A stretch of DNA of 64,000 bases from Euprymna scolopes (lineage: Eukaryota). This document shows positions 1-64,000 of this stretch, piece after piece. Under the pieces are notes generated by a model. That model was not told where the DNA came from. It did no database searches and saw only the letters and a program-made list of their open reading frames with translations. The stretch lies in the NCBI GenBank assembly GCA_053919585.1, contig CM132805.1. One strand, given 5' to 3'. The translations under genes were made by a program, and so were the position numbers. Position 1 is the first letter of the stretch. Each line of letters starts with the position of its first letter.

Positions 1-169
1 TCACCTCTTCCCAGCCATGAAGTTGTTTTTGAAAGGAAAGCGTTCCCCAGATTATGCAGCCTTGATTTCTGGAAGTCACGTCATGGGCTCTCTCTCTACC
101 ATGCTAGAAAGTTATGCCTGAAAGTATCCTCTACCTCTACAAGGCCACGTCATTCATAAATAAAAATTA

Positions 170-305
170 AATGACTTAGAATGACTTTAATAAACTTAAG
201 GATGATTTGAATTACCTTAAGAATGACTTGAATGCTTAAAAATAACTGGAATTCTTCAAAAACAACTTGAATGATCTGGAGAATCACGTGAATGGCTTTG
301 AGACT
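170..305 (+). repeat. Degenerate 21-bp tandem repeat (~6 units)
   Basis: Units aatgactttaataaacttaag / gatgatttgaattaccttaag / aacaacttgaatgatctggag / aatcacgtgaatggctttgag. Confidence 0.65.
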
Positions 306-406
306 GACTGGTTATAAAGTTGGTGATTATTTTACATTAAACTAATACAGAAAAGTGATCCCCCACTTTATATCACAAAGTTACAAACATAAGTACAGCA
401 TGTAGT

Positions 407-449
407 AAGAAAGATACTACACTTTGATCTTGGCCAAAAGGCCAAGAAA
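407..449 (-). pseudogene. U2: U2 snRNA 5'-end fragment, copy 1
   Basis: Reverse complement ttcttggccttttggccaagatcaaagtgtagtatctttctt matches the U2 5' end (TTCTCGGCCTTTTGGCTAAGATCAAGTGTAGTATCTGTTCTT), including the branch-point recognition sequence GTAGTA. Confidence 0.85.
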
Positions 450-451
450 AG

Positions 452-775
452 GGTATTTATTTGCTCCCCCACCAAGCAAATTAGGCACAAGGCCGATTTT
501 TAATGTGAGGAGTAAAGGGGAAATGGGGACCAACTCCCCGGGGAGTAAGGGAGCTGGATAGTGACAATTTGTATAAAGGGTTGCCCCTACACTAACCAAG
601 GTCTTATATGTGGGGTTGGTATTTATTTGCTCCCCCACCGAGCAAATTAGGCACAAGGCCGATTTTTAATGTGAGGAGTGAAGGGGAAATGGGGACCAAC
701 TCCCCGGGGAGTAGGGGAGTTGGATTAGTATGAAGGGTTGCCCCTACATTGACCAAGGTCTTATATGTGGGGTTG
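452..775. repeat. Tandem dimer of a ~160-166 bp hairpin-rich unit
   Basis: ggtatttatttgctccccc starts at 452 and at 618, and the two units are near-identical. Internal palindromes include actccccggggagt and ttgct...agcaa. Confidence 0.9.
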
Positions 776-801
776 TCCCCACATATGGTCTTTGCTTGCC
801 G

Positions 802-843
802 GAACGGATACTACACTTTAATCTTAGCCAAAAGGCCAAGAAA
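802..843 (-). pseudogene. U2: U2 snRNA 5'-end fragment, copy 2
   Basis: Reverse complement ttcttggccttttggctaagattaaagtgtagtatccgttc matches the U2 5' end. Confidence 0.85.
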
Positions 844-857
844 AAGCTTAAAAAGCT

Positions 858-910
858 AAGAACAGCATCTATTAACTACAGACCTTTGATCTTAACCATA
901 AAAGTCAAGC
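858..910 (-). pseudogene. U2: Degenerate third U2 5'-end fragment
   Basis: aagaacag...actaca..ctttgatcttaaccataaaagtcaag aligns, with gaps, to the U2 reverse complement aagaacagatactacacttgatcttagccaaaaggccgag. Confidence 0.5.
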
Positions 911-1139
911 ACAAAAGTGTTACGGACAGACTGACCGACAGATTGACTTGTAGAGTCGCTTGCACATGACTAAAAACGGTCTCCAGAGCTGCATCAAATG
1001 ATGGGAGAAATGCATAACTCTGGGTGGTTCCTATGTAGAGAAAGACTAATAACTGTGCCAAGTTTCGTTGCTCTACTCTTATGGGAAGTGGGTCAGGGAC
1101 ATTACTTATTGCACGCCCCTCATAGCTATTGGTGGTTGA

Positions 1140-1600
1140 GAAGGTTTCTTGTAATTACTGAAGGAAACAAGCTTAGGCTGGGCAGTATTGTATATGACCA
1201 TTCATTTTTGTCCTCATTTCACTACAGATTAAAGGACTTCCTCTAGTTTTTCTGCCATTGCCTTAGATATGTGTTCATTCATTTTTCCCTCTTGCCTGTT
1301 ATATAGCTTGGTGACATTAACAAATATACCTATCTCAGAGACAATTTTATCAGGGAGGTCATTTATGAATATTAGGAAAAATAAAGGTCTAAGGATCGAC
1401 CCCTGAGGTACTACATTTATATCCTATTGTTTAAATGTACGACTGTCGAAGACAACCTGGATTCTTCTCTTATTTAAGAAGGATTTAATTATGTTAAGTA
1501 TTCATCCAATGATACCGTATGATATTATTTTCCTGAGAAAACCATTGTGCCATACCCTGTTAAAAGCCTTAAATATATCTAGGTCTACTGCCCTACCCTC
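1140..1600 (-). mobile_element. Degenerate CR1-group LINE RT fragment
   Basis: Minus-strand remnants of DIxKAFxRVW, PQGS and the YADD region; similar to the copy at 31130-31305. Confidence 0.75.
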
Positions 1601-1622
1601 CCCTGCTTTGTCCAGTGTATGC

Positions 1623-61593: not shown

Positions 61594-61627
61594 TAGATAT
61601 AAACAAAGATAATCACACCTTTGAATG

Positions 61628-61730
61628 TATGCAGCGCCTGGTATTCCCAAATGGTCACTCATATTAGAACTGACCAAGCTCAAGGTCTTTTAACTTCAGT
61701 GATCTAGTGTATCACCTAGATTATGTTGTA
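61628..61730 (-). pseudogene. 5S rRNA-derived copy
   Basis: gcagcgcctggtattcccaaatggtcactcat...actgaccaagctcaagg...ttaacttcagtgatc resembles the 5S reverse complement. Confidence 0.75.
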
Positions 61731-64000
61731 TATGTACTAATACTTATCATTAAGAATTCACAAAATATCTGAGGTATCTTAAATGTCACAAAGGACTTTC
61801 ACCTCTTCTTTGCCGCCATTGCCCAAAGCATAATTAAACTAAATATATCTGACATTACGATTCCTTACGCCTAGTGATTGCATTTCAAAACTCATAAGGA
61901 TCGGTTAATTAGTTTATGAGGAATCCAGTACAAATATGTACACATATACTTTACTTTATGCAAATAGAAATATAGCCACACTGAAGATATTTGATACAAC
62001 GAAATAGCCCATCTGTAAATGACTACATATGTCCCCCTTTGTGAGTACATAAAATAACCACCTACTGTTAGTGATAATGTGCAAAGCATTTCATAACAAC
62101 GAATGCCACATTCTTCTGTAGCTGATAGTGTTTATATATAGATTTGAAGCGCTTGCAAATCTAACCACATTGAAGTGCTGTGATACAACAGAACAGTCTG
62201 TGGATGACTGTATACATGTATAGATATATGTGTCTCCATATTGAAAGAGAACGATATTATGCTGTCAGACTCTTAGTCTCTCTTTCTTTCTCTCTCCTCT
62301 TCCTCTGAGCCTTAATTTTTTTCTTTCAGATAAGTCTGTTTCCTTGCATCTACCTCTTGCCTACACTATCCTCTCCTTTCATGGTCTCTTCATATTGTAA
62401 CAATCATGTCAACACAGGGGGGACTGTCGTTCTTGCTGTCCATTTAATATTTTGACCTGTTTGTCACTACTCCAAATTTCTAGTTAGTTCTAGACTACAA
62501 CGGTAACAACACTAGCTGCCCCCTCTTTTCTGTGAGAAAATGGAAATATATCTGCTTTCATTCCAAATTATGAGTCCCAATTAATTCTAGAATCTTCCGT
62601 AGTGCCTTTAACTCTGTTTCGATAATTTTAGAATTTCCTTGGATGCAAAAGAAGAAAGAGATAAACTATAATTTCATTATTTTACTTAACTCTGCTAATC
62701 GCAAGGGATGCTAATTGCAAATTTTTCTTCTTTTCGTTAATATTGCATGTAATTTACTGATGTTTATTATGCAAATTAAATATGTATATCTAATAACCAT
62801 AATTAACATTCAACAACTGTGTTTTTATACGATGAGCAAATAAGATATCGAATTGTTAATTCAAAATCTTGTTAATCGCATATATATACGATAATCAAGA
62901 AATAAACAACGGGATAAAATGAGTGATCTCTAATTAAGTTCCTCCACTCAAAATTATTTTTAATTTTATTCGTTTATGTTTTATATTGAGAAACAGAATA
63001 ATGAAAACCTAAACTTATAATTAGTTGAACTGTAATTCGTGGTTGTGAAATAGTATTGTTATCATCGTTATATAGGATGATTGAATGTCCCTGACTGAAG
63101 AATATTTAATTTTATTAATCTAACTAGCTATCCTTACCCGGTGTTGCTTGGTAATATTTTCATTTCATAATTTTTCTTTTCTTTTATACTTCACCGATTT
63201 TTTTACCAAAATATTTTTGTTTTTAAATGTAGTTTTGAAAGTTGAATTATGACATAAGTTTGCGTTTTTTTTTTAACTCTTAAATATATAAATAATAACG
63301 TGAGAGCTAGAGGTGCTAAATCAGCAAGTAGGTTGATAGAGAATGAGGGTAGTGCCACGGCCACCGACAGTAAGAAGAAGGCCTGTTAACTGAAAAATGT
63401 CTGCAGGCAATGTAGGTAAGATTTGTCAGACTGTCAGTACTATATGAGGGCCATATGAGCAATAAAACATTTTTAAAAAGAAAAAGGAACACAGTTCGAT
63501 TACTACTTAAACTGAACTTTATTCAATATAAAATATAAATATTATCTATGTAAAATTAAATAATTTTAAAGCAATATACAATTTAATACTGATAAAACTG
63601 AATTATGAATTTAGGGGACAAACAATTAAAGAAACATTAAACAAATATTTGTTGGCCTTCGGAACAAGATCAATAGTATCTGTTTTGATGCTACACTTTA
63701 CCTTTTCTGCCTTCGGTCGGTGGAGGAGAAATCTTTCATGACTGAGATTATTTTTGTTCCTATCCAGAGTGTCCCTTATTGGGAAGTTGGATTTTCTCCA
63801 CAAGATTATATGTTGAAATATTTAATAACTATTACTTTAAATACAGAAATTATATTTAAAGTTTTGGTTTTCTGTTCTTCTATGTCCATTTTTCCTTCAT
63901 GTTTTTCATCAAACTGTGTATCGTATTAGTTGTCTCACAAGCCATCATCAGTGATTGCTCACTGGCATTAACCTGTGGTGTTCCCTGGAGACCAAGTGAC

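What the first reader, a model, noticed from the sequence alone, without database searches (positions are those of the whole stretch)
140..975. Helentron-like mobile element carrying three U2 snRNA 5' ends
Seen: an ~835 bp insert splits a mariner (the flanks rejoin as ...LYK|NGLQSCIK). It holds U2 5'-end copies at 407-449 and 802-843 and a degenerate one at 858-910, all on the same strand. The two good copies include stem I and the GUAGUA branch-point recognition sequence and stop at about U2 nt 45. Known: Keno (Tx1) and Utopia retrotransposons target U2 near nt 37-38, U2-headed SINEs exist in crocodilians, and HINE/DINE-1 elements have tandem cores, a microsatellite and a terminal stem-loop. 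Inference: a rolling-circle element has captured and is spreading U2 heads. These could act as portable landing pads for U2-specific retroelements or yield splicing-interfering RNAs.
Basis: partly seen in the sequence, partly recalled or inferred. Interest (0 to 1): 0.75.

Follow-up and report, generated by a model that had tools for sequence, protein, structure and literature searches.

The report
Rolling-circle transposon carrying U2-headed retroposons
This is one damaged copy of a roughly 6,000-copy rolling-circle-type DNA transposon of a mollusc genome whose middle is a stack of short retroposons that begin with the first ~46 bases of U2 spliceosomal RNA, so the transposon has spread the landing site of U2-homing retroelements to about ten times more places than there are real U2 genes.

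Summary
The U2 pieces are real. Rfam U2 matches the minus strand at 454-298 and 848-732, and only U2 nt 6-49 and 6-46 align. A third, degenerate head lies at 901-857.

The host element is a high-copy family: its hairpin end occurs 6,012 times in the genome. Its structure fits a non-autonomous Helentron (HINE):
- T-run ends and no target duplication;
- a 12-nt subterminal inverted repeat with a palindromic 5' arm;
- a (GTCY)n microsatellite and ~166-bp central repeats.

The right end (976) is a true family end. The left end is not. The window copy lacks its last 122 bp and 30 bp of the mariner, and 84-155 is an inverted copy of nearby DNA.

The heads were probably not picked up from a U2 gene. 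They share derived changes with free U2-headed SINEs that have target duplications, and the 166-bp "repeats" are a second such retroposon.

In other copies of the carrier, further retroelements sit at the Keno/Utopia site of these heads, followed by the duplicated ATCTGTTC.

The LINE partner and the autonomous Helentron were not found. The scan had met this system before elsewhere in this genome.

The parts
1..86 (+). Left part of a mariner copy (Mos1-type transposase family)
   Evidence: Matches 2,928 first-look candidates at 97-98% over 1-86. ORFs of intact copies hit Transposase_1 and HTH_48.
84..155 (.). Filler. This is an inverted duplicate of local DNA (an internal piece of repeat family X) that replaces 30 bp of mariner and the last 122 bp of the carrier. 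It is probably a repair scar.
   Evidence: 98.5% identical, on the opposite strand, to G000:C23:82644788-82644852, 1.2 kb upstream; only 87-95% to other X copies. Intact mariners read differently here. RNA reads of family X run on with other sequence after 148.
156..976 (-). HINE-type (non-autonomous Helentron-like) carrier element. This copy lacks its 3'-terminal 122 bp.
   Evidence: 86-93% identical copies, with the far end fixed at 976 and the near end 122 bp beyond 156. The hairpin-end pattern occurs 6,012 times in the genome.
156..297 (-). Region of ~21-bp tandem repeats (AAGTCATTC-type) in the carrier's 3' arm
   Evidence: TRF periods 19-21 at 174-273. Direct-repeat family D2. Present in all copies.
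298..405 (-). Segment B, which follows head H1. Its start resembles the start of the free SINE-A body. In my sample it occurs only in this carrier.
   Evidence: the junction TGTTCTTACTACATGCTG occurs in about 33 sampled carrier junctions. It contains a hairpin, I1.
406..452 (-). U2 head H1 (U2 nt 6-49, plus the SINE-type 5' CTTTT)
453..617 (-). 5'-truncated copy of retroposon SINE-B (the '166-bp unit'). Its tail abuts the 5' end of H1.
   Evidence: 92-96% identical to unit 618-775. It starts at AACCCCACATA, lacks the linker, and ends in GCAAATAAATACC.
618..800 (-). Full-length body of SINE-B (linker plus unit). It starts directly after U2 nt 46 of H2.
   Evidence: The same body occurs outside the carrier, inside a SINE-A head, followed by ATCTGTTC (L061, L068).
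801..848 (-). U2 head H2 (U2 nt 6-46), cut off by the SINE-B body
857..901 (-). Degenerate U2 head dH (nt 15-49 with three small insertions), conserved in the family
   Evidence: (D5).
925..947 (-). (GTCY)n-type microsatellite of the carrier's 5' arm
   Evidence: TRF 925-947. Length varies between copies and in reads. The same motif class is reported in oyster HINEs (PMC7492417).
954..976 (-). 5' terminus of the carrier: a T5 run (972-976) and the palindromic subterminal inverted repeat. The family form is AGTCGC-N6-GCGACT. This copy is mutated to ...ATGACT.
   Evidence: It is complementary to GCACGCGACTAA, 18-29 nt from the other end in full copies.
977..1127 (+). Right part of the same mariner copy, up to its terminal inverted repeat

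Best explanation
Window 156-976 (minus strand) is a 3'-damaged copy of a ~950-bp non-autonomous Helentron-type DNA transposon (HINE) with about 6,000 copies.

The payload. The carrier's central repeats are not an ordinary satellite. They are a head-to-tail stack of LINE-dependent retroposons that begin with U2 snRNA nt ~3-46/49:
- a degenerate head;
- a full-length 'SINE-B' (head H2 plus a 183-nt body);
- a 5'-truncated SINE-B;
- a third head (H1) joined to segment B.

How it spread. The stack was already present in the master copy and was multiplied passively by rolling-circle transposition. After dispersal, the heads H1 and H2 kept serving as targets for retroelements that integrate at the U2 site used by Keno and Utopia LINEs (between GTA and TCTG). 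Each landing leaves a complete head upstream, so the pad can be used again and the stack grows.

Shown versus inferred.
- Shown: family ends, copy numbers, head coordinates, junction sequences, and independent insertions in other copies.
- Inferred: rolling-circle mobilisation (no autonomous partner was found); retroposition by a Tx1/Keno-like LINE (not retrieved here); and the entry route of the first heads.

The left edge of the window copy is a later deletion patched with an inverted copy of nearby DNA.
For: Carrier.
- Both family ends are fixed. The hairpin-end pattern occurs 6,012 times.
- In U2-sense orientation the ends read TTTTTAGTCGCGTG...ATCGGCCTTGTT.
- No target duplication of consistent length: the only repeats at the ends are 3-6 nt, seen in 9 of 19 copies against 17% of mismatched control pairs.
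- A 12-nt subterminal inverted repeat, with a 6-bp palindromic 5' arm.
- A (GTCY)n microsatellite and variable ~166-bp central repeats. This is the HINE layout described in PMC4067079 and PMC7492417.
- The 5' end sits in the T5 run of an intact mariner site.

Payload.
- The heads match this genome's own U2 over nt 6-46/49 only.
- The carrier heads and the free SINE heads share CTTGGCC, where U2 has CTCGGCC, and share the replaced 5' end.
- Free SINE-A copies have target duplications of 13 bp (L074) and 6 bp (L073).
- The SINE-A and SINE-B tails are alike, of the form GTGGGG(G)AG(G)CA...AAATA.
- Truncated units always lack the linker side, as 5' truncation predicts.

Landing pad.
- 48 of 156 unit ends are followed by ATCTGTTC(C).
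- Extra units sit right after H2 in L014, L017, L020 and L022.
- A ~0.5-kb element, E3, lies at one identical point of H2 in L007 and L029, with different 5' truncations and a 13-nt duplication.
- A 1.06-kb element, E4 (4,640 first-look candidates), lies in H2 of L008.
- SINE-B lies in H1 of L062 and L072, followed by ATCTGTTCTTACTAC.
- The 3' junction lies within one base of the Keno/Utopia site, where downstream U2 starts at nt 39 (PMC4640811).

Scale.
- 22,456 head cores in the genome, against about 1,191 matches of a pattern specific to real U2 genes.
- 9 of 20 sampled heads lie in this carrier family.
Against: - No autonomous Helentron with these ends was found. The best Rep/Hel loci belong to one young Helitron family with no carrier termini within 1.5 kb of the Rep domain.
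- The 3' terminal hairpin is weak: z scores of 0 to -1.3.
- The 3' subterminal repeat lies 17 nt from the end, not the 38-60 nt reported for mite HINEs.
- No complete empty site was recovered, so the TT target is supported by one half-site only.
- No LINE with the SINE tail was retrieved.
- In the master stack, unit tails abut the 5' end of the next complete head, not U2 nt 39. Integration at the Keno site does not explain this. Template switching or recombination has to be invoked.
- Segment B was seen only inside the carrier.
- Single-head copies exist, so a captured U2 fragment as the first head cannot be excluded.
Confidence: 0.72

Rival explanations
1. The rolling-circle element itself captured one or more fragments of a U2 gene, by read-through or template jumping during DNA transposition. 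Retroelements colonised them only afterwards, and the U2-headed SINEs may even descend from this captured piece.
For: - H1 and dH reach U2 nt 49, which is further than SINE-B heads.
- Segment B was found only inside the carrier in my sample.
- Single-head copies (dH-head-B) exist in the genome and in RNA reads.
- Helitron-type elements are known to capture host DNA (PMC4344730 abstract).
Against: - The carrier heads share the derived CTTGGCC and the replaced 5' end with free SINE heads, not with the real U2.
- B begins like the SINE-A body.
- No U2 flanking or 3' sequence is present.
- The single-head form is equally well explained by recombination between H1 and H2, which are 47-nt direct repeats 394 bp apart.
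Confidence: 0.15
2. The variable number of units and heads among copies comes from unequal crossing-over or replication slippage within a satellite-like core, as proposed for other HINEs. It does not come from new retro-insertions, and the heads have no target function.
For: - Long regular arrays of the 166-bp unit occur in some copies (L025, L013).
- Blocks of head-linker-unit are repeated as a whole in L009, L016, L021 and L024.
- Reads show a 'goes back 388' joint.
Against: - Different element families (a variant SINE-B, E3, E4) sit at fixed bases of the heads in different copies, with short duplications of head sequence and differing 5' truncations.
- The same junction occurs outside the carrier, in a SINE-A head (L061).
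- Recombination cannot create these. It probably contributes to the repeats of whole blocks.
Confidence: 0.08
3. The carrier is not a Helentron derivative. It is some other kind of non-autonomous element, or a segmentally duplicated composite, whose ends only resemble HINE ends.
For: - No autonomous partner was found.
- The 3' hairpin is weak.
- The spacing of the 3' subterminal repeat differs from the published range.
Against: - About 6,000 dispersed copies have exact ends in unrelated flanks.
- No target duplication of consistent length.
- T-run termini, a palindromic 5' subterminal repeat, a (GTCY)n microsatellite and ~160-bp central repeats match oyster Cg_HINE point by point.
Confidence: 0.05

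Closest known systems
HINE / DINE-1-like non-autonomous Helentrons (mite HINE-Mo, Drosophila DINE-1, oyster Cg_HINE, bivalve Pearl)
   Same: - T-run ends and insertion into T-rich sites without target duplication.
- A 12-nt subterminal inverted repeat whose 5' arm is palindromic.
- A (GTCY)n microsatellite in the left module.
- A short array of ~160-bp central repeats.
- Thousands of copies.
   Different: - Here the central repeats can be identified as retroposons with U2 snRNA heads and a SINE-type tail.
- The array grows by site-specific retro-insertion.
- The 3' subterminal repeat is closer to the end (17 nt), and the 3' palindrome is weak.
- No autonomous partner was identified.
SINEU (U1/U2-headed SINEs of crocodilians, Kojima 2015, PMC4494074)
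   Same: - Short retroposons whose 5' head is copied from U2 snRNA.
- Tandem insertions that sandwich a duplicated target.
- Association with one DNA-transposon family as preferred site.
- Heads added by presumed template switching.
   Different: - A mollusc genome, with unrelated bodies.
- The target is the U2 head itself, at the Keno/Utopia site, not a mariner sequence.
- The carrier is a rolling-circle-type element that multiplies the SINEs passively.
- Sequence homology to crocodilian SINEU was not tested.
Keno (Tx1 clade) and Utopia (restriction-like endonuclease clade), the LINEs that target U2 snRNA genes (PMC4640811)
   Same: The 3' junction of the inserted elements lies within one base of their site: downstream U2 starts at nt 39 in the usual numbering, i.e. 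GTA|TCTG. Tandem insertions occur at the site.
   Different: - What is inserted here are non-coding elements (0.18, ~0.5 and 1.06 kb).
- The targets are ~46-nt U2 heads on mobile elements, not U2 genes.
YURE elements inserted in the U2-derived satellite U2_sat of Ciona (mentioned in PMC4640811)
   Same: Relatives of U2-homing LINEs land in repeated U2-derived sequence outside functional U2 genes.
   Different: There the target is a tandem satellite. Here it is dispersed by a DNA transposon and by the SINEs themselves.

Membership tests
HINE (non-autonomous Helentron) | 12-15-bp subterminal inverted repeats, the 5' one a few nt from the terminus | tested here: met
   TTAGTCGCGTGC lies 3 nt from the 5' end. 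Its complement GCACGCGACTAA lies 18-29 nt from the 3' end. Both are conserved in about 20-27 copies.
HINE (non-autonomous Helentron) | Inverted repeat or palindrome at the 5' subterminal repeat | tested here: met
   AGTCGC-N6-GCGACT folds with a 6-bp stem in typical copies, at -3.6 to -5.7 kcal/mol. It is mutated in the window copy.
HINE (non-autonomous Helentron) | Short palindrome or stem-loop near the 3' end | tested here: inconclusive
   Only 3-5-bp stems form in the last 35 nt, and the folds are no better than shuffles: z from 0 to -1.3.
HINE (non-autonomous Helentron) | Strings of T at both boundaries; insertion in TT or T-rich sites | tested here: inconclusive
   The ends TTTTT... and ...TT are seen in 19 copies. 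One half-site shows the 5' end lying in the T5 run of an otherwise intact mariner sequence. No complete empty site was recovered.
HINE (non-autonomous Helentron) | No target-site duplication | tested here: met
   No repeat of consistent length was found in 19 full copies. Short 3-6-nt matches occur in 9 of 19 copies, against 17% of mismatched control pairs, and differ in length from copy to copy.
HINE (non-autonomous Helentron) | Microsatellite in the left module and tandem central repeats | tested here: met
   A (GTCY)n microsatellite at 925-947. Variable numbers of 166-bp units.
HINE (non-autonomous Helentron) | Autonomous Helentron (Rep/helicase/endonuclease) with the same termini | tested here: inconclusive
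   The genome holds at least 6,421 Helitron_like_N candidates, some with open frames of 1,603 aa. The ten best loci are one 99%-identical family without carrier termini within 1.5 kb. No further DNA could be fetched.
Canonical Helitron | 5' TC and 3' CTRR ends, hairpin ~11 bp from the 3' end, insertion between A and T | tested here: not met
   The ends are TTTTTAG... and ...CCTTGTT on one strand, or AACAAGG... and ...CTAAAAA on the other.
SINEU-like (snRNA-headed SINE) | 5' head derived from U2 snRNA | tested here: met
   The heads align to this genome's U2 over nt 6-46/49 at 93% identity. Rfam U2 gives E = 1e-6.
SINEU-like (snRNA-headed SINE) | Dispersed short copies with target-site duplications | tested here: met
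   The free SINE-A copy L074 has a 13-bp duplication and L073 a 6-bp one. Upstream flanks of heads are diverse in RNA reads, with agreement of 0.42-0.47.
SINEU-like (snRNA-headed SINE) | 3' tail shared with a partner LINE (Tx1 clade in crocodilians) | not tested
   SINE-A, SINE-B, E3 and E4 share 3' motifs with each other.
Keno/Utopia-type U2 site specificity | 3' junction at U2 nt 38/39 (downstream U2 starts at nt 39) | tested here: met
   Unit tails are followed by (A)TCTGTTC in 48 of 156 junctions, and in H1 of L062 and L072. The published site comes from PMC4640811. The junction is ambiguous by one A.
Keno/Utopia-type U2 site specificity | Element encodes a reverse transcriptase with an apurinic/apyrimidinic-type (Keno) or restriction-like (Utopia) endonuclease | not tested
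   The inserted elements seen here are non-coding. The 272-aa ORF behind a head in L078 has no Pfam or Atlas match.
Functional U2 snRNA gene | Full-length RNA with the Sm site and stem-loops III/IV, scoring above Rfam's threshold | tested here: not met
   Scores of 44.2 and 42.3 bits are below the threshold of 46 and rest on the first ~46 nt only. Real genes score 161 bits and form a 764-bp tandem array.

The most novel reading that the evidence does not exclude
This is a three-tier parasite system. A Helentron-type DNA transposon carries and multiplies the target site of U2-homing LINEs and SINEs. Most integrations of these 'gene-specific' retroelements then go into mobile decoy heads (roughly 10,000 in this carrier alone) and not into the ~1,200 real U2 genes. 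More broadly, the ~160-bp 'satellite-like' central repeats of mollusc HINEs may in general arise as stacks of site-specific retroposons.
Probability: 0.35. Interest if true: 0.75.

Novelty: new variant of a known kind. Interest (0 to 1): 0.6.

Why it matters
Target-specific LINEs are thought to be limited by the small number of their target genes. Kojima and Jurka discuss this for U2 (PMC4640811). Here the target has been put on wheels twice. The SINEs carry it as their own head, and a rolling-circle transposon then copied a SINE stack about 6,000 times. This gives a concrete, testable case of one transposon class enlarging the niche of another.

It also offers a mechanism for how the 'satellite' cores of HINEs can form and grow. 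And it extends snRNA-headed SINEs, so far published only for crocodilians, to a mollusc.

For annotation, it explains thousands of spurious U2-like hits in this genome.

Tried and rejected
- Whole-genome Rfam U2 search failed twice. I replaced it with a 28-nt pattern specific to real U2 genes.
So no LINE in the U2 array, no E4 flanks and no full Helitron could be read.
- The ten best Rep/Hel loci hold no carrier termini.
- The gapped-pattern counts for single-head versus two-head carriers returned 1+1 each. That is far too few for the common form, so I use them only as proof that both forms exist, not as frequencies.
- The 272-aa ORF downstream of a head in L078 is low-complexity, with no Pfam family even at E = 10 and no Atlas hit. 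I do not claim it as a LINE ORF1.
- The shared tail motif GGCCTTGTGCCTAA occurs in the window only in the two units, so the window holds no partner LINE.
- The search for a target duplication at the carrier ends found none of consistent length.
- 3' hairpin folding was not significant. One folded reference (L011) was in the wrong orientation and is ignored.
- I considered a SINE/LINE nature for the carrier itself (a fixed end plus variable length). I rejected it once both ends proved fixed and the length variation mapped to the interior.
- The masked N stretch at about 14400-14530 was left alone.
Full report
**Observation**

The region was read directly and scanned with Rfam. U2 matches the minus strand at 454-298 (44.2 bits) and 848-732 (42.3 bits). 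Both are just under the gathering score of 46, and only the first ~46 model positions align well.

The genome's own U2 was found with a pattern specific to real genes. It has 1,191 matches, most of them in a 764-bp tandem array on contig C9. One copy, L037:1559-1361, scores 161 bits. Against that copy:
- H1 = window 448-406 = U2 nt 6-49 (41/44);
- H2 = 842-802 = nt 6-46 (38/41);
- the degenerate head = 901-857 = nt 15-49, with three small insertions.

A 33-nt head pattern hits only these two good sites in the 64-kb window, with 0 expected by chance. They lie on one strand and include stem I and GTAGTA.

**Family and ends**

The stretch 140-975 has 7,642 first-look candidates in the 5.9-Gb assembly. 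Thirty fetched copies are 86-93% identical to it.

The right end is exact in every copy...AGTCGCTTGCACGCGACTAAAAA, then unrelated flank. The left side is different. All other copies continue for 122 bp beyond window 156, to a second exact end, AACAAGGCCGATAGCC.... The hairpin-end pattern occurs 6,012 times.

In the orientation of the U2 heads the element reads TTTTTAGTCGCGTG ... ATCGGCCTTGTT. Nineteen full copies show no target duplication of consistent length.

**The left edge of the window copy**

Intact copies of the surrounding mariner read ...CACGTCATGG, then 30 bp, then TTCTACAAAAACGGTCTCC. This family is a mariner by Transposase_1 and HTH_48. In the window:
- those 30 bp and the carrier's last 122 bp are absent;
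- window 84-148 is a 98.5% inverted copy of DNA 1.2 kb upstream, an internal piece of another repeat family into which the mariner had inserted.

The left boundary is therefore a deletion patched with local filler, not a transposition end.

The right junction is informative. The carrier's five terminal T (sense strand) coincide with the mariner's T5 run.

**What the carrier is**

Thomas et al. (PMC4067079) and Vojvoda Zeljko et al. (PMC7492417) define HINEs by these features:
- subterminal inverted repeats, the 5' one a few bases from the end and paired with an inverted repeat;
- a microsatellite (often GTCY) in the left module;
- ~160-bp central repeats;
- a 3' subterminal repeat followed by a palindrome;
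- strings of T at the ends;
- T-rich targets and no target duplication.

This family has:
- TTAGTCGCGTGC 3 nt from the 5' end, with its complement 18-29 nt from the 3' end;
- a 6-bp palindrome at the 5' repeat;
- a (GTCY)n tract;
- variable 166-bp repeats;
- T-run ends and no consistent target duplication.

The 3' stem-loop is weak. No autonomous partner was found: the genome is rich in Rep/Hel genes, but the ten best loci are one young Helitron family without these termini. Canonical Helitron ends are absent. I file the carrier as HINE-like, with those two gaps stated.

**What the U2 heads and 'core repeats' are**

I sampled 20 perfect head cores on contig C1:
- Nine lie in this carrier.
- Six lie at one fixed site of a second repeat family.
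- Two are free ~200-nt elements (SINE-A), with target duplications of 13 bp and 6 bp.
- Two (L061, L068) show a head followed by the same linker plus 166-nt unit as in the window, outside the carrier. In L061 this body sits inside a SINE-A head and is followed by ATCTGTTC and the rest of SINE-A.
- One has a different continuation.

The unit is thus the body of a second retroposon, SINE-B. Three points support this:
- its tail resembles the SINE-A tail;
- its truncated copies always lack the linker side, as 5' truncation predicts;
- carrier heads and SINE heads share derived differences from real U2, namely CTTGGCC for CTCGGCC and a replaced 5' end.

In sense orientation the window copy therefore reads: 5' arm, degenerate head, H2, full SINE-B body (800-618), 5'-truncated SINE-B (617-453), H1, segment B, 21-bp repeats, then the missing 3' end. 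Segment B starts like a SINE-A body, but I saw it only in the carrier.

**Landing-pad use**

All 19 full copies share the 3'-proximal core of the stack and differ just after H2.
- L014, L017, L020 and L022 have extra or variant SINE-B bodies there, each followed by ATCTGTTCC.
- L007 and L029 carry another element at one identical base of H2, with a 13-nt duplication and different 5' truncations. These are independent events.
- L008 carries a 1.06-kb element of a family with 4,640 candidates.
- In L062 and L072, SINE-B lies in H1 and is followed by ATCTGTTCTTACTAC.

Over all sampled loci, 48 of 156 unit ends are followed by ATCTGTTC. Kojima and Jurka report that U2 downstream of Utopia and Keno starts at nt 39, i.e. 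TCTGTTC (PMC4640811).

**Unexplained**

In the master stack, unit tails abut the 5' end of the next complete head (about 40 junctions, mostly the same inherited one), not nt 39. Integration at the Keno site does not produce that. Two routes could:
- template switching from the 5' end of one RNA to the tail of another, as proposed for SINEU 5' additions (PMC4494074);
- recombination.

Single-head copies exist (two genomic hits; a 446-to-842 joint in 285 reads of one run). They may be ancestral, or deletions between H1 and H2. Direct capture of a U2 fragment as the very first head cannot be excluded. I give it 0.15.

**RNA**

The family is present in polyA RNA libraries of several coded organisms. 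In run X21 the carrier arms show a 10:1 bias of first mates on the minus strand. The SINE-B units show the reverse bias (2:1), and the mariner flanks show none. The library chemistry is not known to me, so the transcribed strand is not assigned.

Most head-containing reads continue into the SINE-A body (2,611 loose ends in X24). Reads crossing 156 continue with the family's missing arm, which confirms the truncation. Nothing here tests interference with splicing.

**Scale and novelty**

There are 22,456 head cores against about 1,200 real U2 genes. By sampling, roughly 45% of the heads are in this carrier (9 of 20).

HINEs with satellite-like cores are known in molluscs. U2-headed SINEs are published only for crocodilians. 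U2-homing LINEs are known in many animals. I found no paper combining them, or reporting U2-headed SINEs in cephalopods or other molluscs, in the held library.

Earlier notes of this scan had already described the same system on other DNA of this genome. I took the retroposon-stack reading from them as a lead and tested it here.

I rate this a new variant of known kinds, with interest 0.6.

Noticed in passing
L010:2182-2847 (minus strand; G000:C27, inside a carrier copy): A ~720-bp insertion in the SINE-B linker of this copy holds a 222-aa ORF with a Parvo_NS1 match (E = 1.5e-07). It is probably a fragment of a parvo- or densovirus-like NS1 gene. I only observed it.
   Followed up: no
G000:C9:168876456-168954253 (U2 gene array; not fetched): The regular 764-bp ladder of real-U2 pattern hits is broken by gaps of 8,382, 7,914, 7,896 and 7,875 bp. 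Each equals one unit plus ~7.1-7.6 kb that destroys U2 nt 33-60. These are candidates for full-length U2-homing LINEs in real genes.
   Followed up: no
L059, L065, L067, L069, L071, L078 (G000:C1): Six of 20 sampled U2 heads sit at one fixed site of a second repeat family. That family starts ~165 bp upstream of the head and has ~88-bp tandem repeats downstream. It is a second carrier that multiplies a U2-headed SINE-A copy.
   Followed up: partly
window 177-396 and 617-704: In polyA RNA run X21, first mates on the carrier arms lie 10:1 on the minus strand. On the SINE-B units they lie 2:1 on the plus strand. The mariner flanks are balanced.
   Followed up: no
window 11616-11732 and 61626-61733 (minus strand): Weak 5S rRNA-like matches (37 and 30 bits, below the threshold of 38), possibly 5S-headed SINEs. 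There is also a weak, diverged U2-like head at 14632-14806 (30 bits).
   Followed up: no
L079-L088 (ten loci of G000): A very young Helitron family: Rep domains score 208 bits, copies are 98.6-99.6% identical over 3.5 kb, and open frames reach 1,603 aa. There are at least 6,421 Helitron_like_N candidates genome-wide.
   Followed up: partly
window 1121-1620 and upstream of the window (L001:8-332): The mariner that hosts the carrier is itself inserted in a copy of a ~2-kb repeat family (X). That copy supplied the inverted filler at 84-155.
   Followed up: partly
L008:2427-3489 (minus strand): A 1.06-kb non-coding element of defined length (4,640 first-look candidates, most matching from base 1 to 1,061). 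It carries the same GGCCTTGTGCCTAA 3' module as SINE-B and lies in a U2 head.
   Followed up: partly
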